Shown here in pieces: positions 3,349 through 9,135 of a DNA stretch of 64,000 bases (position 1 is its first letter; each line of letters begins with the position of its first letter). The notes under the pieces are model-generated. The model saw nothing but the letters and a program-made list of their open reading frames with translations, had not been told where the DNA came from and ran no database searches. The stretch is from the sequence record NC_048674.1; one strand, written 5' to 3'. The translations under genes and the position numbers were made by a program.

Positions 3349-3750
3349 TTATTTGAAACGTTTTACCTTGTAGGTCACCAGCTTAATGAACTCCAATGAA
3401 TCCTCAAGTGCGTTTAAAGTTCCTTTAAACTCTGGTTTTCCATCAAGTAACTCAGCCAACTCAGAGCCGTTGTCGTAAAGTCCCTGTAACACACTCAGAG
3501 CGTCGTCTGACGCAACTTCAAAGTGGTTGTATACCAACTCGATGTCGTTAGCCAAGGCGCTCTCTGCAACCGAATCTAGGTAGTCATCTGGGAATTCCTT
3601 ATAGAACTCATCAAGTGCCATATGGAGCGCATAATTGTTGGTTGTAAGATGGAGAAAGTGGATCTTTGCAACCGTCTTTAATCCAAGAGTCACAAATCTA
3701 GATACTCTATCTGAGATTCGTTTCATATCATATTTATAAGCTATTTTCAT
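3349..3750 (-). CDS. Ferritin/Dps-like four-helix protein (DUF5856-like)
   Basis: HFLHLTTNNYALHMALDEFY motif with His/Glu spacing typical of phage ferritin-like proteins. Confidence 0.7.
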   Translation of the reverse strand: MKIAYKYDMKRISDRVSRFVTLGLKTVAKIHFLHLTTNNYALHMALDEFYKEFPDDYLDSVAESALANDIELVYNHFEVASDDALSVLQGLYDNGSELAELLDGKPEFKGTLNALEDSLEFIKLVTYKVKRFK

Positions 3751-4301
3751 TGCATTCCCAATTTAACGATTAATGAATCCATCTTGAATGCGGCATAACT
3801 AATTAGACCGTATGTGGTATTTATTTCTTTACCACCATCCAAGTGATATGAACAACTACTACGATTAGTGAATTGTCTCTGACCATTGGTACATGTGAAA
3901 TAAGGTTCATCAATAATGATCATACTATATTTTTCAATCCTACTTCCATGAATAACATGATTGTATGTACCACGAGAATAAAACCTATTAACAAAGTCGC
4001 TAATNGACAACACTTGGTNTTTTAAATGTGGTGCNACNGACAATATANATCTGATAGTAGGATGGTTGTGAACAANATACAAAGCGTCTTTATGTTCTTC
4101 TAACAACATAATAGCAGCAGATGTTTTTCCTGTTTGTCTTCCCATATCCAAGCATATAGTCCCCAACTCTTGTTGGAATGCATCAGGAGATATCATCAAT
4201 CGACTCCTGTCTAGATATTCGGAACTTTTAAATAATTTTAATTTTTTGTTTACCATACTAACATATTCGTCTCTAAAGAAACTGTTTGGCGATATCATCA
4301 T
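3747..4301 (-). CDS. P-loop NTPase-like protein (helicase/terminase-like motifs)
   Basis: MGRQTGKT Walker A and IIIDE Walker B; contains Ns. Confidence 0.65.
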   Translation of the reverse strand: MMISPNSFFRDEYVSMVNKKLKLFKSSEYLDRSRLMISPDAFQQELGTICLDMGRQTGKTSAAIMLLEEHKDALYXVHNHPTIRXILXXAPHLKXQVLXISDFVNRFYSRGTYNHVIHGSRIEKYSMIIIDEPYFTCTNGQRQFTNRSSCSYHLDGGKEINTTYGLISYAAFKMDSLIVKLGMQ

Positions 4302-5032: not shown

Positions 5033-5284
5033 TTAACTATATTGATAACCGGCGTTAGCCTTTTTCATTTCGTAATCATCATCAACAAAAACATCGTGAT
5101 TACCGTGCATGATATCATGTTTCAATTTACGATCTCGCTGACGACTCAATGTATTATAACGATCTTTGACACCCGATTCTGGATAACTAGGATATTTATC
5201 TCCCAGATCCCGATTCACTTTAAGTTCATCACCATACCAACTGTCCAGATGTTTTTCATTTTTACGACGAAATGTCTTACCCAT
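5033..5284 (-). CDS. Hypothetical basic protein
   Basis: 83-aa ORF (MGKTFRRK...) with AAGGA RBS. Confidence 0.7.
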   Translation of the reverse strand: MGKTFRRKNEKHLDSWYGDELKVNRDLGDKYPSYPESGVKDRYNTLSRQRDRKLKHDIMHGNHDVFVDDDYEMKKANAGYQYS

Positions 5285-5294
5285 ATATCATTCC

Positions 5295-5489
5295 TTACAG
5301 GCTTTCTATGTATTTAATCACACGGTTTAGTATTTCATTTGAATCATTTATCTCAATATCATCAAATGCATACTTTATCTTTTTTATTACAGTTTCTTTC
5401 TTCCATCCGATCTTGAAAGCATCATTAACGAAAGAAACCCAATCAATAATATAACCGGAATTATAAAATTTCTCTATCAGAATATCCAA
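5295..5489 (-). CDS. Small protein resembling the alanyl-tRNA synthetase YDTYGFPLD helical segment; start uncertain
   Basis: Frame open well upstream of the TTG at 5489: ...VFYQFETNGIPLDILIEKF...IDWVSFVNDAFKIGW. Confidence 0.55.
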   Translation of the reverse strand: MDILIEKFYNSGYIIDWVSFVNDAFKIGWKKETVIKKIKYAFDDIEINDSNEILNRVIKYIESL

Positions 5490-5639
5490 TGGAATACCAT
5501 TTGTTTCAAACTGATAAAATACATTACATAAAACCGGAATACCATTATTGGTATAACCATTTACAAAAACACTATTTTTACCTTTACGTCCTAACGGCTT
5601 GCGTTTAGCGGTGACATATACAACCTCTCTTTTTAAGTT

Positions 5640-6112
5640 TTAGCTTCATGTGCGGCTGCAAAGCAGGTCGAACCACCAAGGCACATACTTGTTGATGTGG
5701 TTCCGTAAATCGATCCGGTCGCACCATCACCGGACTTAATAGCATTGGCTATCCGAGCCCAACATACAAACATCATCACCCCAATGGGCTACGCCTGCAA
5801 AACGGTCTTGCTCGTTACTTTTACGCTTAGGCCCTTATGGGAATCTAAGCCTTATATTTAACGTCATAACGGACGCGCTTATGTGATGGCTTGAATCAGT
5901 GGTCATTCACAAGCAATACTCCCTATGTAACCTTTTACCCGTCACGGACTAGAACCTTATTACAGGGAAGGAACCTACATCACCATTTGAGTAATGGGAG
6001 AGGTCGGGGTTCGGTTTTTATTTTCTAGCTTTCACTAGATTTTTTACAAATACCGGTGGGCTACTTAAAGCGTCGATTCTCATAGACCGGACTATTGACG
6101 AGAATCCAAAAT
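5640..6112 (-). ncRNA. Candidate large structured non-coding RNA downstream of tRNA-Thr
   Basis: No ORF of 60 aa or more; long-range helix 5970-5981/5694-5704, many nested stems, predicted pseudoknot 5866-5871/5813-5818. Confidence 0.6.
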
Positions 6113-6113
6113 T

Positions 6114-6189
6114 TGGTGCCGAATGTCCGACTCGAACGGACCACCCCAGCGTTACAAAGGCTGTGCTCTACCAGATGAGCTAATTCGGC
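6114..6189 (-). tRNA. tRNA-Thr (TGT)
   Basis: Cloverleaf GCCGAAT..ATTCGGC-A-CCA, loop TTTGTAA, TTCGAG T-loop. Confidence 0.93.
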
Positions 6190-6190
6190 A

Positions 6191-6467
6191 GCGGATTATA
6201 ATCAGGATCGTTAGACTGTGATTATATCCTAATGTAGTTGACATGCTATCACAAGGAGGAAGGACGTTCAACTGATTTTGTCCATCTGTTCGTTGTTTGG
6301 TAAAGGACAGTTACCTCAAGTTCAACCCTGCTTGTCAAGGAGTAGTTACCATATCGTCTTTATACTACCAATCCCGCCTGAAACCTAAAGGCACGTTTCA
6401 GGATATCCAGATTCTCTATGGCTGGCTTATTCCGGGGCATACGTCGTTACCCGTTCTTTGTGCTAAG
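6191..6467 (-). ncRNA. Candidate structured RNA between tRNA-Pro and tRNA-Thr
   Basis: Stems CCTGAAAC/GTTTCAGG and GGAT-ATAATCA/TGATTAT-AATCC; internal segment ends ...GTCCTTTACCA. Confidence 0.4.
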
Positions 6468-6543
6468 TGGTCGGTGATACAGGACTCGAACCTGTGACCC
6501 TCTGGTCCCAAACCAGACGCGCTACCAACTGCGCTAATCACCG
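6468..6543 (-). tRNA. tRNA-Pro (TGG)
   Basis: TCTGG-TTTGGGA-CCAGA anticodon arm; encoded CCA. Confidence 0.96.
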
Positions 6544-6697
6544 AAAAGTTCCAAACCAACTGTATTTTACATACCAGATGACCACATCCCTATAATGGTT
6601 GATTTGGATTACCCCGTGCTTATCCGTAACGGTTTAAAACCGCAAGGGGGCATCGTCTCCGAGGATTTTATCAGAACGTCTTCTAACTTCTTCTATT

Positions 6698-6788
6698 TGG
6701 TGGATGCTGTTGGATTCGAACCAACTTGTTTACCCAGAGGGAACGGATTTACAGTCCGCCGCTACACCGCCATCGTAGCCGAACATTC
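6698..6788 (-). tRNA. tRNA-Tyr (GTA)
   Basis: GCGGA-CTGTAAA-TCCGT, long variable arm, CCA. Confidence 0.93.
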
Positions 6789-6794
6789 AGAATT

Positions 6795-6870
6795 TGGCTG
6801 GCGAGGTGGGATTCGAACCCACGACATACGGATTAACAGTCCGCTGTTCTACCTACTGAACTACACGCCA
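6795..6870 (-). tRNA. tRNA-Asn (GTT)
   Basis: GCGGA-CTGTTAA-TCCGT, TTCGAA T-loop, CCA. Confidence 0.95.
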
Positions 6871-6871
6871 T

Positions 6872-6949
6872 TGGAAGCGGGAGGTGGATTTGAACCACCG
6901 ATTTCCAGATAATGAGTCTGGCGAGAACTCCTGACTTCTCCACCCCGCT
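6872..6949 (-). tRNA. tRNA-Met (CAT), atypical
   Basis: CCAGA-CTCATTA-TCTGG, AGCGGGG acceptor, CCA; T37 and T73. Confidence 0.85.
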
Positions 6950-6953
6950 ATGA

Positions 6954-6960
6954 TATTTAG
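6954..6960 (-). promoter_or_regulatory. Late promoter CTAAATA immediately upstream of tRNA-Met
   Basis: tatttag on the plus strand, 4 nt from the tRNA 5' end. Confidence 0.6.
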
Positions 6961-7111
6961 GGTGGTCTTTCACCCTTCATGAATCTTGGTCATTATAACC
7001 CGGCTACATACGCGCATCAACATCCCTTTATAATTTTAAAAGCTAGGGGACTCATACCAGCTTTATTGTCATCGTAAGGTCAACGACCATTAAATTTGTG
7101 AGAGCTTACGA

Positions 7112-7306
7112 CTATAGAATATATGCATTAACTATGGATTTTTCGATCTGTCTTACTGATGTAAGTTTACTCTTACCTTTAAACTTAAAGGCAGGTTCTC
7201 CATTTGGAGCAAACCCAAAGACTACTAAACTATGGCGTCCATTCTTCCAATGGATTATACCATCACCAACTGACCAATTTTCAATTATGGATTTTATACC
7301 AGACAT
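7112..7306 (-). CDS. Hypothetical protein within tRNA cluster
   Basis: 64-aa ORF on the operon strand. Confidence 0.55.
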   Translation of the reverse strand: MSGIKSIIENWSVGDGIIHWKNGRHSLVVFGFAPNGEPAFKFKGKSKLTSVRQIEKSIVNAYIL

Positions 7307-7327
7307 AATATAGTTCTCATCAAAATT

Positions 7328-7404
7328 TGGTGGCCCCTACTGGACTCGAACCAGTGACCAACCGATTATGAGTCGGTTGCTCTAACCAACTGAGCTAAGG
7401 GGCC
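7328..7404 (-). tRNA. tRNA-Ile2 (CAT, lysidine type)
   Basis: GGCCCCT acceptor and CTCATAA loop closely resemble enterobacterial ileX. Confidence 0.9.
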
Positions 7405-7438
7405 AAACAACACGTATAATACGTATTACTATTGAATT

Positions 7439-7514
7439 TGGAGCGGGTAGCCGGTAACGATCCGGTCTACTCAAACTTGGAAGGCTTGCATGTATCCATA
7501 AACACCTTACCCGC
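7439..7514 (-). tRNA. tRNA-Gly (TCC)
   Basis: CAAGC-CTTCCAA-GTTTG; atypical ATCGTTA T-loop; TCCA end. Confidence 0.9.
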
Positions 7515-7515
7515 T

Positions 7516-7599
7516 TGGTCGGGATGGACGGACTCGAACCGTCACGCCTATGGCGCTAGAACCTAAATCTAGTGTGTCTGCCAATTTCACCACATCCCG
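7516..7599 (-). tRNA. tRNA-Leu (TAG)
   Basis: CTAGA-TTTAGGT-TCTAG, variable arm, CCA. Confidence 0.93.
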
Positions 7600-7676
7600 T
7601 GGTGCGCCGTACTGGATTCGAACCAGTGACCCACGCTTTAGAAGAACGTTGCTCTATCCAACTGAGCTAACAGCGC
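7600..7676 (-). tRNA. tRNA-Arg (TCT)
   Basis: ACGTT-CTTCTAA-AGCGT, CCA. Confidence 0.95.
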
Positions 7677-7680
7677 AATT

Positions 7681-7727
7681 TATATAAACATCATATCATA
7701 GTTAGAAAGGATGTTTAACTTTTATTT
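7681..7727 (-). promoter_or_regulatory. Sigma70-type early promoter, copy 1 of a 47-bp direct repeat
   Basis: TTAAAC (7713-7718)-17 nt-TG-a-TATGAT (7690-7695), upstream of tRNA-Arg. Confidence 0.75.
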
Positions 7728-8120
7728 GAAGTATTTTTCGAAGTAAGCGACTGGATGTCTTGCTTCTTCATCATACTCGTATTTAGGGGTGTCAGAAAAC
7801 AACACCCTATAAGCAGTTTTCGACCCGGAACCATATGGTATCTCAATTTCATCATTAAAGTCAAATTCTATATAACCTTTTTTACGAAGGGACCGGCAGC
7901 TAACACTCAACCAAGGTCCGCAACAGGATTTGAGTCTACCAATTGCGTAGATATCCTTTCCCTCGTTGTTAATATAGCAATAAATCTTGTCTACATCAAC
8001 ACCATGGATATTTTTCCATTCTTCACTGGTTTGTTTGAAGATCAAACTTGATTGAACCACAGTAAGACCTTTCTTGATAAACTTACTAATACCAATGAGA
8101 TGAATATCATGTTTATTCAT
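7722..8120 (-). CDS. Hypothetical protein
   Basis: 132-aa ORF, ATGA overlap with the upstream gene. Confidence 0.7.
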   Translation of the reverse strand: MNKHDIHLIGISKFIKKGLTVVQSSLIFKQTSEEWKNIHGVDVDKIYCYINNEGKDIYAIGRLKSCCGPWLSVSCRSLRKKGYIEFDFNDEIEIPYGSGSKTAYRVLFSDTPKYEYDEEARHPVAYFEKYFK

Positions 8121-8506
8121 GATAAACCTTCATATATTTCCATATCCCATGCAATAATTTCTCCAACTTTGTAAGTATCACCGTTACGAATAGCTAATGA
8201 TCGGACACAAAAAGAAGGAAGGCACCCATGAACATCATATACTTTGTCATTGGTTATTTCTACATCACCAGTAACAATAATGATATTATCTTTCTTGTAA
8301 GTTTCTATGGAATTAAGAATACCAACCGGATCCGGAGTATCTTTAGCATTATCAATGTTAAAACATTTTTGACCAAAATTGATTAGAACAGGTAGTTTTT
8401 TAGAAAATTCATCTATAACTTGTTCATTCAAAATGAATTTTAATCCGTTCGTATTAACCAAAGAACTTTTTTCATTAAGGTTGTAAGCCCCAAGCTTCAC
8501 TTTCAT
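8117..8506 (-). CDS. Hypothetical protein
   Basis: 129-aa ORF. Confidence 0.7.
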   Translation of the reverse strand: MKVKLGAYNLNEKSSLVNTNGLKFILNEQVIDEFSKKLPVLINFGQKCFNIDNAKDTPDPVGILNSIETYKKDNIIIVTGDVEITNDKVYDVHGCLPSFCVRSLAIRNGDTYKVGEIIAWDMEIYEGLS

Positions 8507-8507
8507 T

Positions 8508-8654
8508 TTAATATCTCGATTTTTGATAGAAAGGCTTCAAATGTTTACCACGCATAATCTTTACACATTTACCTTTACAGTGTTCTTCGTTGAAGACACT
8601 ACCCCAAAGGACTCCACACATGTAATTTCTGATGTATACGTTCATATTAAGCAT
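8508..8654 (-). CDS. Small Cys-containing hypothetical protein (48 aa)
   Basis: Hand-translated MLNMNVYIRNYMCGVLWG...KSRY; abuts the next gene. Confidence 0.45.
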   Translation of the reverse strand: MLNMNVYIRNYMCGVLWGSVFNEEHCKGKCVKIMRGKHLKPFYQKSRY

Positions 8655-8742
8655 CTCATATTGAATTTGAGAGATGATAAACTCACATAACGTCCAAAAA
8701 GCTCATTCAACAAAAAGGAATTTGAGTTTATCATCTTGTATT

Positions 8743-8835
8743 TGGTGCGTGAGGTGGGAATCGAACCCACGATGTGCCATTATGCAGTATCGGATTTTAA
8801 GTCCGATGCGTTTCAACCAACTTCGCCACTCACGC
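8743..8835 (-). tRNA. tRNA-Leu (TAA)
   Basis: TCGGA-CTTAAAA-TCCGA, long variable arm, CCA. Confidence 0.93.
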
Positions 8836-8840
8836 TCATT

Positions 8841-8887
8841 TATATAAACATCATATCACAGTTAGAAAGTATGTTTAACTTTTATTT
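8841..8887 (-). promoter_or_regulatory. Sigma70-type early promoter, copy 2 of a 47-bp direct repeat
   Basis: 45/47 identical to 7681-7727; upstream of tRNA-Leu(TAA). Confidence 0.75.
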
Positions 8888-9135
8888 TTACTTTCTTTTA
8901 TACCAAGTCGATATGCTTCTACACAGTATGCGTCGATCCTTGATACAGGGACCATAAAAGCTTTAGAAAGCCGATTCTTAATACGTTCGTTCTCTTTAGC
9001 CCGCTCATATAGTTTTCGAAATGGCTCAGGGTCTATAGGCTGAACAGAACATATTTGGTTTGCTATATCCAGCGGATATATTCTTCCACCCCAAGTTACT
9101 TTTTCTGATTCTAAAAAATTCATATCATTTCTCAC
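8875..9135 (-). CDS. Hypothetical protein
   Basis: 86-aa ORF overlapping the upstream gene end. Confidence 0.65.
   Translation of the reverse strand: MRNDMNFLESEKVTWGGRIYPLDIANQICSVQPIDPEPFRKLYERAKENERIKNRLSKAFMVPVSRIDAYCVEAYRLGIKESKNKS

What the first reader, a model, noticed from the sequence alone, without database searches (positions are those of the whole stretch)
5640..6112. Candidate ~470-nt pseudoknotted ncRNA at the 3' end of the phage tRNA operon
Seen (minus strand): a GC-richer stretch without ORFs that starts right after the CCA of tRNA-Thr. A long-range helix GATGTAGGTTCC (5981-5970) / GGAACCACATC (5704-5694) closes a ~270-nt domain. Inside it are CTTCCCT-GTAA/TTAC-AGGGAG, GCTT-GAAT/ATTC-AAGC, GCTTAG-(CCC ATAA GGG)-CTAAGC, GCAAGA/TTTTGC, AGCCCA/TGGGCT, ATAGC/GCTAT and CCGGT/ACCGG. 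An H-type pseudoknot is predicted: hairpin CGTC-CGTTAT-GACG whose loop pairs with GTAACG at 5818-5813. Flanks include GATTCTC/GAGAATC (inner loop TCCGGT could pair with ACCGG), a CTAG-T-GAAA-G-CTAG tetraloop and a 3' ATGTGC/GCACAT domain holding a GGTTCGACC T-loop-like element. Known: T4 tRNA clusters carry small stable RNAs (rnaC/rnaD), and large RNAs such as GOLLD and ROOL occur in phage tRNA clusters. I did not recognise tmRNA, RNase P or group I signature motifs. Inference: an unclassified large structured RNA co-processed with the tRNAs.
Basis: partly seen in the sequence, partly recalled or inferred. Interest (0 to 1): 0.85.

Follow-up and report, generated by a model that had tools for sequence, protein, structure and literature searches.

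The report
Mosaic of small phage RNA modules
The stretch after tRNA-Thr in this Aeromonas T4-like phage is not one 470-nt RNA but a chain of separately inherited non-coding RNA cassettes, and one of them is an apparently undescribed ~100-nt structured RNA found in over a thousand phage genomes, T4 included.

Summary
The window is Aeromonas phage AS-sw. It is not one ~470-nt RNA.

- **Mosaic:** ten relatives show at least four cassettes (A, B, C, D) that occur independently. tRNA-Trp sits between C and D in five relatives.
the closing helix and the pseudoknot do not covary. A helix that long appears in 8-27% of shuffles.
- **Cassette C (5853-5707):** a ~147-nt multi-helix RNA found only in Aeromonas T4-like phages.
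- **Cassette B1 (~6018-5919):** a ~100-nt motif with an invariant CCUGUAAUAAGGU core.
  - One version hits 1,092 phage records. Confirmed copies are in T4 (between denV and vs.8), T2, Dhaka-, Gelderland- and Vequintaviruses, T5-like Aeromonas phages and uncultured phages, mostly inside tRNA arrays.
  - Four helices covary strongly.
  - It has no Rfam match, no similarity to T4 rnaC/rnaD, and no copy in E. coli genomes or plasmids.

Function is unknown. My best guess is that these are small RNAs released by tRNA-processing enzymes.

The parts
6195..6222 (-). sigma-70-like promoter match (ATCACA-16-TATAAT) immediately upstream of tRNA-Thr
   Evidence: Consensus scan, 10 of 12 matches. This is a pattern match only. 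No terminator-like site lies on this strand anywhere in 5200-9000.
6114..6189 (-). tRNA-Thr (UGU), the last tRNA before the non-coding stretch
   Evidence: ARAGORN; Rfam tRNA model, 55.7 bits.
6043..6113 (-). Cassette A. It contains the hairpin GAUUCUC...GAGAAUC (6106-6075). The small CUAG-UGAAAG-CUAG hairpin follows just outside it at 6038-6025.
   Evidence: Present in all Ceceduovirus relatives and, after tRNA-Asp, in phage 65 and avDM6. The hairpin keeps pairing through U-A to C-G in phage 65 and avDM6 (GAUUCCC/GGGAAUC).
5919..6018 (-). Cassette B1, a member of a widespread phage RNA motif. Elements: P1 6016-6013 with 5975-5972; P2 hairpin 5997-5983; Pa 5971-5968 with 5934-5931; invariant core CCUGUAAUAAGGU 5966-5954; P4 hairpin 5949-5941; junction GGGUA 5940-5936; tail UUACAUAGGGAG 5930-5919.
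   Evidence: - CM R1 gives 74.2 bits, E 1e-16, at 5976-5919, the only copy in the window.
- The full-length profile HMM covers 6018-5916, E 2e-22.
- Covariation over 27 instances: 90.4% paired against 69.4% shuffled, score 0.516 against 0.134, 0 of 500 shuffles as high.
- Pa and P4 alone: 97.2% paired, score 0.634 against 0.197.
5854..5918 (-). Cassette B2: two local hairpins, GCUUG...CAAGC (5914-5889) and CGUC-CGUUAU-GACG (5875-5862). Found only next to B1 in Aeromonas T4-like phages.
   Evidence: Co-occurs with B1 in Ceceduovirus, Aswh_1 and ZPAH1, but not in T5-like phages, where B1 is followed by unrelated sequence. The loop of the second hairpin varies freely. No covariation test was possible.
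5707..5853 (-). Cassette C: a ~147-nt structured RNA. It has hairpin GCUUAG/CUAAGC with a variable tip, a domain closed by CGAGC/GCUCG that contains a 9-bp stem, hairpin AUAGC/GCUAU, and hairpin UCCGGU/ACCGGA. In most relatives it ends directly before tRNA-Trp.
   Evidence: - Conserved in all 11 relatives.
- RNAalifold consensus has 43 pairs, 98.8% paired, 4 pairs with changes on both sides. Slid controls are 22-45% paired.
- Single-sequence z = -2.44.
- CM R2 finds it only in Aeromonas T4-like phages.
5708..5710 (-). C/D junction. A tRNA-Trp (CCA) gene occupies this point in CC2, AP1, P19, Aswh_1 and ZPAH1. It is deleted in AS-sw and partly retained in AS-szw and Assk.
   Evidence: BLAST block boundaries, ARAGORN on the relatives, alignment.
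5560..5710 (-).
   Evidence: Inherited as a separate block downstream of tRNA-Trp in relatives, and split into two blocks in phage 65. The Rfam scan finds no tRNA-like match here.

Best explanation
**Shown.** The interval is a chain of at least four independently inherited non-coding cassettes (A, B1+B2, C, D) at the 3' end of a tRNA operon, not one RNA. B1 and C each fold on their own.

- B1 belongs to a ~100-nt RNA family of large virulent phages. Helix P1 encloses a variable hairpin P2. P1 abuts helix Pa, which closes a junction. That junction holds the invariant CCUGUAAUAAGGU segment (probably a CCU-GUAAUA-AGG hairpin), a short G-C hairpin P4, and a GGUAA joiner.
- C is a lineage-specific ~147-nt multi-helix RNA.

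**Inferred.** The cassettes are transcribed with the tRNAs, since a promoter-like site precedes tRNA-Thr and no terminator follows. They are probably cut out as small stable RNAs by the enzymes that mature the flanking tRNAs. In relatives, RNase P cleavage at the 5' end of tRNA-Trp would define the 3' end of C.

**Inferred, weaker.** B1 probably acts in trans by binding a factor shared by many Gammaproteobacterial hosts or their phages, whether a protein, the translation or tRNA machinery, or a small ligand. The reasons are that its core is invariant across unrelated phage families, it has no constant neighbouring gene, and it has moved between T4-like and T5-like Aeromonas phages.
For: **Mosaic structure**
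- Block-wise BLAST and nhmmer show A, B, C and D present or absent independently in 11 relatives.
- tRNA-Trp lies between C and D in five relatives.
- B1 alone occurs in T5-like Aeromonas phages at 82-83% identity.

**B1 family**
- blastn of one version hits 1,092 phage records.
- Instances were confirmed in T4, T2, Dhakavirus, Gelderlandvirus, Ci1, Ahp1, a Shewanella phage, Vequintavirus and uncultured contigs.
- The CM separates true members (35-76 bits) from chance matches that contain the exact core (25 bits or less).
- Covariation in P1, P2, Pa and P4 beats shuffles in 0 of 500 trials, and the slid controls collapse.
- RNAalifold on the hand alignment recovers P1, P2, Pa and P4.

**Context**
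- B1 lies on the tRNA strand inside or beside tRNA arrays in most lineages.
- There is one copy per phage stretch examined.
- It is absent from 5,426 E. coli genomes and 72,556 plasmids.

**Cassette C**.

**Transcription signals**: promoter-like site, no terminator.

**Precedent**: T4 makes small stable RNAs (rnaC, rnaD) from its tRNA operon (PMC3014915; PMC9697503).
Against: - No transcript data were available, so discrete stable RNAs and their ends are inferred.
- The B1 helices are short (3-7 bp). Single-sequence thermodynamics mostly do not predict P1 or Pa, with pair probabilities usually below 0.1.
- I chose the P1 and P2 columns of the alignment by looking for complementarity, which inflates their counts. 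P4's boundaries were also hand-set. Only Pa sits at a purely fixed offset from the core.
- Pa pairs a pyrimidine-rich strand with a purine-rich strand, so part of its pairing is compositional: duplex energy z is about 0 against shuffled 3' strands.
- The tail after Pa is also complementary to the core (mean z = -1.47). That cannot form together with Pa, so the true fold, or a switch between two folds, is unresolved.
- In T-even phages B1 lies outside the tRNA cluster, ~65 nt upstream of the likely vs.8 start. That fits a cis-acting leader as well as a trans-acting RNA.
- The covariation in C rests on two or three haplotypes only.
Confidence: 0.55

Rival explanations
1. One reading: one ~470-nt RNA closed by the helix 5981-5970/5704-5694, containing an H-type pseudoknot, and processed as a unit with the tRNAs.
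For: The helix is in the single-sequence MFE fold. The region is non-coding and has no Rfam match.
Against: - The cassettes are inherited separately.
- A tRNA-Trp gene lies inside the helix span in AP1, P19 and CC2.
- The strands change without compensation, and phage 65 has one strand only.
- The pseudoknot loop varies against an invariant partner.
- A helix of that size occurs in 8-27% of shuffles.
- The 5' strand is used by covarying B1 helices.
Confidence: 0.05
2. B1 is a cis-acting leader, either a riboswitch-like element or a protein-controlled one. It would switch between the Pa fold and the core:tail fold to control read-through or translation of what follows.
For: - Two mutually exclusive pairings of the invariant core both have support: Pa by covariation, and core:tail by excess complementarity in 10 of 25 lineages.
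- In T-even, Dhaka- and Gelderland-type phages the motif lies in the 5' region of a vs.8-like gene.
- AS-sw has a vs.8 homologue on the same strand about 1.6 kb downstream.
- An invariant core is typical of ligand-binding RNAs.
Against: - In most lineages the next feature is a tRNA or another RNA cassette, not an ORF.
- No terminator follows B1 in the window.
- In T4 the likely vs.8 ribosome-binding site is ~55-65 nt beyond the motif and is not part of either pairing.
- The L179 group lacks tail complementarity.
Confidence: 0.2
3. The cassettes are DNA-level debris or recombination modules, that is, remnants of shuffled tRNA-array spacers with no RNA function of their own.
For: - The locus is plastic. 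tRNA-Trp is gained or lost, the first hairpin of C is duplicated in CC2 and Assk, and an insert sits between B and C.
- Phage 65 lacks B1 altogether at blastn sensitivity, so it is dispensable.
Against: - Compensatory changes in four B1 helices and in C indicate selection on RNA pairing.
- A 13-nt core is invariant across Straboviridae, Demerecviridae, Vequintavirinae and unclassified phages.
- This rival could still hold for A, B2 and D, which were not shown to covary beyond one pair.
Confidence: 0.12
4. The region encodes degenerate tRNAs, tRNA-like molecules or small proteins.
For: It sits in a tRNA array. T4 annotation reads through its B1 copy as the start of vs.8, and T2 annotates a 34-aa ORF there.
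Against: - ARAGORN and the Rfam tRNA, tmRNA and other models find nothing in 5400-6113 even at E up to 10.
- The ORFs in the interval (46-48 aa) cross the tRNA-Trp insertion point.
- The reading frame over the T4 copy is not conserved in T2, L167, ESCO10 or L204. Protein conservation starts at MRTFLTG / MKFLTP downstream.
Confidence: 0.03

Closest known systems
Bacteriophage T4 small stable RNAs rnaD (species 2, 119 nt) and rnaC (species 1, 139 nt)
   Same: They are non-coding RNAs encoded directly after a tRNA gene at the 3' end of a T4-type tRNA operon. Their function remains unknown after decades (PMC3014915; PMC9697503). Their sizes are similar to B1 (~100 nt) and C (~147 nt).
   Different: - There is no detectable homology. 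CM R1, CM R2 and a full-length B1 profile HMM give no hit on T4 rnaD or rnaC.
- T4 carries its own B1 copy elsewhere, between denV and vs.8, so B1 is a separate family.
- By eye, rnaD loosely resembles B1 (UGAUG-GGUU-CCCUGAGUAAGG ... CUUACAU). That remains only a lead.
Large ornate RNAs found in phage or tRNA contexts (GOLLD, ROOL)
   Same: They are structured non-coding RNAs of unknown function, sometimes next to tRNA genes in phages.
   Different: There is no Rfam hit to either family. What is conserved here are ~100- and ~150-nt units, not a single domain of more than 400 nt.
Unnamed candidate structured RNAs from the IMG/VR-wide screen (Fremin et al. 2023, PMC10690425)
   Same: That screen used comparative genomics to predict phage RNA motifs, including tRNA-adjacent ones. 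The B1 family could be among its 10,006 candidates.
   Different: I could not check this. The main text names no such motif, and no supplementary sequence files are held. A full-text search for the core sequence found no relevant paper.
Riboswitch or ribozyme-type RNAs with an invariant core in a multi-helix junction
   Same: Short covarying helices surround a block of invariant nucleotides, and there is a possible alternative pairing of the core.
   Different: It matches no Rfam riboswitch or ribozyme model at E up to 1 on nine diverse instances. It has no consistent downstream gene, and no ligand or cleavage site is known.

Membership tests
B1 motif family (defined here) | Invariant core CCUGUAAUAAGGU followed 8-26 nt later by GUAA(A/U) | tested here: met
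   Window 5966-5954 and 5938-5934. The core is invariant in the 23 aligned members except one C and one U substitution.
B1 motif family (defined here) | Helix Pa: the 4-5 nt just 5' of the core pair with the 4-5 nt that follow the GUAA joiner | tested here: met
   CCUU (5971-5968) pairs with AAGG (5934-5931). Across the family, 3 of the 4 Pa columns are 100% paired, each with 3 pair types.
B1 motif family (defined here) | Helix P1 enclosing a variable hairpin P2 and abutting Pa | tested here: met
   AACC (6016-6013) pairs with GGUU (5975-5972). P2 is CCAUU/AAUGG. There are more than 10 different complementary P1 versions across lineages. Caveat: these columns were hand-chosen.
B1 motif family (defined here) | Covariance-model score clearly above chance matches that contain the same core | tested here: met
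   74.2 bits in the window. Members score 35-76 bits and chance core matches 25 bits or less.
T4 rnaC / rnaD small stable RNAs | Encoded in a phage tRNA operon, downstream of a tRNA, on the same strand | tested here: met
T4 rnaC / rnaD small stable RNAs | Sequence or structure homology to T4 rnaC or rnaD | tested here: not met
   No hit on L016 with R1 (E up to 10), R2 (E up to 10) or the B1 profile HMM (E up to 100).
T4 rnaC / rnaD small stable RNAs | Accumulates as a discrete stable RNA during infection | not testable with these tools
   No expression data for AS-sw or for the T4 denV-vs.8 spacer.
Any Rfam 15 family (tRNA, tmRNA, RNase P, group I/II introns, GOLLD, ROOL, riboswitches, ribozymes) | Match to the family covariance model | tested here: not met
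   Nothing at gathering score in the window except tRNAs. Nothing relevant at E up to 10 in 5400-6500. Nothing at B1 positions in nine other instances at E up to 1.
   Cassettes occur separately. tRNA-Trp lies within the span. The closing helix and pseudoknot are not compensated.
Cis-regulatory leader or riboswitch | Constant position upstream of homologous genes, with an expression platform overlapping a terminator or ribosome-binding site | tested here: inconclusive
   B1 is upstream of vs.8-like genes in T-even-type phages, but it is followed by tRNAs or RNA cassettes elsewhere. No terminator follows it. An alternative core:tail pairing exists in many lineages.

The most novel reading that the evidence does not exclude
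B1 is a previously undescribed class of functional phage RNA, carried from T4 to T5-like and rV5-like phages, usually in tRNA arrays. Its invariant junction would either bind a conserved host component, for example a tRNA-directed enzyme or a tRNA-targeting defence nuclease, for which it would serve as decoy or inhibitor. Or it would sense a ligand by switching between two folds. T4 would then encode a functional non-coding RNA that has gone unannotated inside the reading frame assigned to vs.8.
Probability: 0.3. Interest if true: 0.8.

Novelty: new variant of a known kind. Interest (0 to 1): 0.62.

Why it matters
Phage tRNA arrays are now seen as counter-measures to tRNA-targeting immunity. 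The non-tRNA RNAs inside them, such as T4 rnaC and rnaD, have had no function assigned for fifty years.

This locus adds a further RNA family. It shows strong covariation, has an invariant core, and spreads across unrelated virulent phages of Gammaproteobacteria. It has a copy in T4 itself, the most tractable phage there is. The question of what these RNAs do therefore becomes directly testable in E. coli K-12 or B with T4 genetics.

The work also suggests that the annotated start of T4 vs.8 is wrong. More generally, it shows that 'large RNA' calls made from a single-sequence fold in such arrays should be checked for cassette structure.

Tried and rejected
1. **Rfam.** The whole window at gathering score, the locus at E up to 10, and nine other instances at E up to 1 gave nothing but tRNAs.
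2. **Homology of B1 or C to T4 rnaD or rnaC.** Rejected by two CMs and a profile HMM.
Rejected by comparison with relatives. RNAalifold instead supports a 9-bp stem, UGCAGGCGU/AUGUUUGUA, with three compensated positions.
4. **Short exact patterns in IMG/VR** (GTCCGNGACGGGTAAAAGGTTACA, CCTGTAANAAGGTTC, TAGCCAATGCTATTAAG). These returned only known phages or chance matches.
   - Four new members emerged from the profile-HMM screen (L226, L268, L372, L409), and a fifth, L290, was accepted only after the CM rescoring.
   - All but L290 lie in or beside tRNA genes. L372 and L409 come from a mis-binned 'Phocaeicola' MAG.
   - Absence from bacteria is therefore not proven. It is backed by no hit in E. 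coli genomes or plasmids.
6. **MAFFT on full-length B1 sequences.** It mis-registers P1. I used an N-padded hand alignment, which MAFFT shifted by one column for five sequences, slightly lowering the P1 counts.
7. **tRNA-Tyr anticodon-arm mimicry by CUGUAAU, k-turn (UGAUG), GTPase-centre GUAAUA loop mimicry, promoter or MotA-box readings.** I considered these from memory. None could be tested, and none is claimed.
8. **Literature.** Searches for the core sequence and for T4 denV/vs.8 RNAs found nothing relevant.
Full report
**Identity of the window and the locus.**
The query interval is 100% identical to Aeromonas phage AS-sw (MF498775; Straboviridae, Emmerichvirinae, Ceceduovirus). On the minus strand a run of tRNA genes ends with tRNA-Thr at 6189-6114. 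From 6113 down to about 5500 no CDS is annotated in AS-sw or in better-annotated relatives such as vB_AdhaM_G2. The mechanical ORFs there are 46-48 aa. A sigma-70-like match (ATCACA-16-TATAAT, 6222-6195) sits just upstream of tRNA-Thr, and no terminator-like site occurs on that strand between 9000 and 5200. The interval is therefore most simply part of the tRNA transcript. That is an inference.

**Checking the observation.**
Statistically the folds are unremarkable:
- z = -1.7 for the 474-nt interval
- z = -2.0 for 6113-5708
- z = -0.4 for the B part
- z = -2.4 for the C part

A Watson-Crick helix of 11 bp or more with one bulge turns up in 16 of 60 dinucleotide shuffles, and 12 bp or more in 5 of 60. 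Rfam gives only tRNAs at gathering score. In a permissive scan of 5400-6500 nothing relevant appears at E up to 10. So there is no tmRNA, RNase P, intron, GOLLD, ROOL, riboswitch or ribozyme match.

**The interval is a mosaic.**
Block-wise BLAST and nhmmer against ten relatives split it into cassettes:
- A: 6113-6043
- B: 6029-5857
- C: 5853-5708
- D: 5710-5560

Their distributions differ:
- Phage 65 and avDM6 have A, C and D but no B.
- Aswh_1 and ZPAH1 have B and C, with different flanks.
- CC2 and ZPAH1 carry an extra ~86-88 nt between B and C. In CC2 this includes a second copy of the first hairpin of C. Assk has the same duplicated hairpin, but the rest of its gap is a run of N.
- T5-like Aeromonas phages (Demerecviridae, Shenzhenvirus) have only the 5' 95-100 nt of B, at 82-83% identity, inside their own tRNA arrays.

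ARAGORN places a tRNA-Trp gene exactly at the C/D junction in CC2, AP1, P19, Aswh_1 and ZPAH1. AS-sw has lost it, and AS-szw and Assk keep fragments.

- The 3' strand of the closing helix (5704-5694) lies in D. In AP1, P19 and CC2 that is beyond tRNA-Trp.
- The distance between the two strands ranges from 277 nt to 495 nt.
- Aswh_1 and ZPAH1 change the 5' strand to GATGGAGCTTCC, and no complementary sequence is present.
- The 3' strand drifts (CATC, CAAC, CATT) without compensation.
- Phage 65 keeps the 3' strand with no 5' strand at all.
- The pseudoknot loop reads CGTTAT, TGTTAT, TGTAAT, TATCAT or CATCAT, while its proposed partner GTAACG is invariant. That partner is also present in phages that lack the hairpin.

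- GATTCTC/GAGAATC, which becomes GATTCCC/GGGAATC
- GCTTAG/CTAAGC with a variable CCC/GGG tip
- ATAGC/GCTAT
- CCGGT/ACCGG, which becomes CTGGT/ACCAG through a U.G intermediate

**Cassette C.**
RNAalifold on eight relatives gives 43 pairs, 98.8% of cells paired. Slid controls are 22-45% paired. Four pairs change on both sides.
- a CGAGC/GCUCG closing helix
- a 9-bp stem, UGCAGGCGU/AUGUUUGUA in AS-sw and UGUAGGCUU/AGGUUUACA in the other haplotype, with three compensated positions

A covariance model of C (R2) finds one copy in the window (5853-5707, 169 bits), plus phage 65 and avDM6. It finds nothing in T4, including rnaC and rnaD, in T5-like phages or in the other loci. C is thus a real but lineage-restricted RNA. 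Its covariation rests on only two or three haplotypes.

**Cassette B1 is the main result.**
A second BLAST with B+C picked up the segment 5980-5920 in Aeromonas phage Ahp1_CNU-2021, Citrobacter phage Ci1, E. coli phage ESCO10 and Shewanella phage KASIA.

Re-searching with the ESCO10 version hit 1,092 phage records, including Tequatrovirus, Dhakavirus, Gelderlandvirus, Klebsiella, Enterobacter, Yersinia and Salmonella T4-like phages, and Vequintavirus. T4 itself carries a copy immediately after the denV stop codon, overlapping the annotated start of vs.8.

Pattern scans of IMG/VR added five or more uncultured lineages. The metagenome and bacterial-genome scans added five more members between them.

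All copies share these features:
- Helix P1, which appears in at least eleven mutually complementary versions: AACC/GGUU, AAGC/GCUU, AAAGG/CCUUU, GGGAA/UUCCC, GGGAG/CUCCC, AGGC/GCCU, AACUC/GAGUU, UGCAA/UUGCA, UGCGU/ACGCG, CCAACAA/UUGUUGG and ACUCC/GGAGU.
- A variable hairpin P2 inside P1, often with a GNRA loop.
- A 5-nt strand directly after P1 that pairs with the 5 nt following a G(G/A)GUAA joiner. This is helix Pa.
- The invariant CCUGUAAUAAGGU.
- A 3-bp G-C hairpin P4.

On a 27-sequence hand alignment, 90.4% of cells pair against 69.4% in shuffles. The covariation score is 0.516 against 0.134 (0 of 500 shuffles as high) and 0.02-0.10 when partners are slid. Seventeen of 25 pairs change on both sides.

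I chose the P1 and P2 columns by eye, so I repeated the count for Pa and P4 alone. Pa lies at a fixed offset from the invariant core, while P4's boundaries were hand-set. The result was 97.2% paired against 75.1%, and a score of 0.634 against 0.197, with slid controls at 0.13 or less.

RNAalifold on the same alignment recovers P1, P2, Pa and P4, and adds a CCU-GUAAUA-AGG hairpin within the core.

A covariance model of the 3' domain (R1) scores members at 35-76 bits. Chance sequences that contain the exact 13-mer plus GTAAA score 25 bits or less. The window has exactly one copy, at 5976-5919, with 74.2 bits.

**Caveats on the B1 structure.**
- The helices are short, and single-sequence partition functions rarely favour P1 or Pa. 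If the fold is real, it must be stabilised by tertiary contacts or a partner.
- Pa pairs a pyrimidine-rich strand with a purine-rich one, so some of its pairing is compositional. The A-U and U-A swaps in the T4 and L192 groups argue against composition alone.
- The tail after Pa (UUACAUAGGG in AS-sw) is complementary to the core more often than shuffled tails are: mean z = -1.47, with 10 of 25 lineages below -1.64. The 5' side of that pairing never varies, and the L179 group lacks it.
- Pa and this core:tail pairing cross with no linker. In my judgement they cannot form together. They are either alternatives or one of them is spurious.

**Context and distribution of B1.**
- It lies on the tRNA strand within or next to tRNA arrays in these lineages:
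  - Ceceduovirus and Ishigurovirus
  - Shenzhenvirus
  - Ahp1
  - Ci1
  - Vequintavirus, about 600 nt upstream of the array
  - uncultured lineages L179, L185, L192, L193, L197, L200, L226 and L268
- It lies elsewhere in T-even, Dhaka- and Gelderland-type phages (between denV or ip genes and a vs.8-like gene), in the L170 group and in KASIA.
- No flanking protein gene is constant.
- Phage 65 lacks it at this locus and at blastn sensitivity genome-wide, so it is accessory.
- It was not found in 5,426 complete E. coli genomes or 72,556 plasmids.
- Of 120 bacterial-genome matches to the core pattern, only two short contigs of one MAG carry the motif. One of them is a 4.9-kb contig with 23 tRNAs, clearly a mis-binned T5-like phage array.

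**Relation to known RNAs.**
- T4 encodes rnaD and rnaC directly after tRNA-Arg. Reviews and a 2022 omics study still list their function as unknown (PMC3014915; PMC9697503).
- B1 and C resemble them in kind and size but not in sequence or structure. R1, R2 and a full-length B1 profile HMM give no hit on them. T4 also has its B1 copy at a different locus.
- Nine diverse B1 instances have no Rfam match at E up to 1.
- A full-text search for the core sequence found no relevant paper.
- A 2023 screen predicted 10,006 unnamed candidate RNAs in IMG/VR (PMC10690425). I could not check whether B1 is among them, because no supplementary files are held.

**How it most likely works.**
- Shown: a mosaic of cassettes; two independently folding, covarying RNAs; association with tRNA arrays; restriction to virulent phages.
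- Inferred: co-transcription with the tRNAs, and release by RNase P, RNase E and 3' trimming, as for T4 rnaC and rnaD. In relatives the 3' end of C would be made by RNase P cutting at tRNA-Trp.
- Inferred, weaker: B1 acts in trans on something common to many Gammaproteobacterial hosts.
  - Its 13-nt core is invariant across three phage families.
  - It has no fixed gene neighbour.
  - It has evidently moved between T4-like and T5-like Aeromonas phages.
- A cis-acting, two-state leader is the main rival, especially for the T-even copies, which sit ~65 nt upstream of the likely vs.8 start.
- I could not tell whether the partner is a protein, the translation or tRNA machinery, a defence nuclease or a small molecule.

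**Verdict.**
The 470-nt pseudoknotted RNA is not supported. What is there is a chain of small RNA cassettes. One of them belongs to a widespread, strongly covarying and apparently undescribed phage RNA family that includes an unannotated element in T4.

Noticed in passing
L163 (T4 NC_000866) minus strand ~6960-6850, i.e. T4 ~64.85-64.95 kb: The annotated start of T4 vs.8 lies inside the B1 motif, 26 nt after the denV stop. The frame upstream of MRTFLTGPYL is broken or shifted in T2, L167, ESCO10 and L204, so the true start is probably ~65 nt downstream of the motif. T2 annotates a 34-aa ORF over its copy.
   Followed up: partly
window 3747-4301 (minus strand): This 184-aa ORF is a vs.8 homologue (LDMGRQTGKTSA against T4 LRLDGGRQSGKS). 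It lies about 1.6 kb downstream of B1 on the same strand, a loose synteny with T4's motif-vs.8 arrangement. Its translation contains several X, so the window has ambiguous bases there.
   Followed up: no
L158 ~1555-1600; L163 minus strand just after the motif; L161; L162: T-even, Dhaka- and Gelderland-type copies of B1 are followed by a second conserved hairpin, GCCA-NGGAA-UGGC (AUGUGCCACGGAAUGGCC), before the vs.8-like gene. Aeromonas copies are followed by unrelated hairpins (B2).
   Followed up: no
L003 (CC2) 1858-1990 and L014 (Assk) 1149-1282: CC2 and Assk carry a second copy of the first hairpin of cassette C. In CC2 it is followed by about 85 nt of unique sequence before the full C. In Assk the rest of the gap is a run of N. 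This suggests recombination at that hairpin.
   Followed up: no
L010 (AS-szw) 1295-1352; L014 (Assk) 1427-1499; window ~5709: tRNA-Trp is intact in CC2, AP1, P19, Aswh_1 and ZPAH1. It is truncated in AS-szw, undetected by ARAGORN in Assk, and cleanly absent in AS-sw. This looks like recent decay of one tRNA gene within a species-level clade.
   Followed up: partly
L372 and L409 (GTDB MAG 'Phocaeicola sp. WFFMC_MAG_101'): L372, a 4.9-kb contig with 23 tRNA genes and a B1 copy, closely resembles the T5-like Aeromonas phage array. It is almost certainly phage DNA mis-binned into a Bacteroidota MAG.
   Followed up: partly
L016 (T4) 3172-3054 minus strand (rnaD): By eye, rnaD shares a pattern with B1: AACC...UGAUG-GGUU-CCCUGAGUAAGG...CUUACAU. 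Neither the CM nor the profile HMM detects it, so this is an untested lead to distant homology.
   Followed up: partly
window 5911-5881 (cassette B2): A 31-nt stretch of the GCUUG...CAAGC hairpin matches three Acinetobacter phages at 93.5% identity (E 2e-3), and a neighbouring stretch matches Shewanella phage 1/4. This may be chance or another small mobile hairpin.
   Followed up: no
L008 437-511; L372 334-408: ARAGORN calls a tRNA with a CUA anticodon (reported as tRNA-Pyl, i.e. an amber suppressor) in the T5-like Aeromonas phage arrays. AhP_Mru1's annotation also lists a suppressor tRNA.
   Followed up: no
L159 (Shewanella phage KASIA) 1-1079: The terminase large-subunit gene just upstream of its B1 copy is annotated as joined from three pieces, with an HNH endonuclease inside, which suggests introns or inteins.
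   Followed up: no
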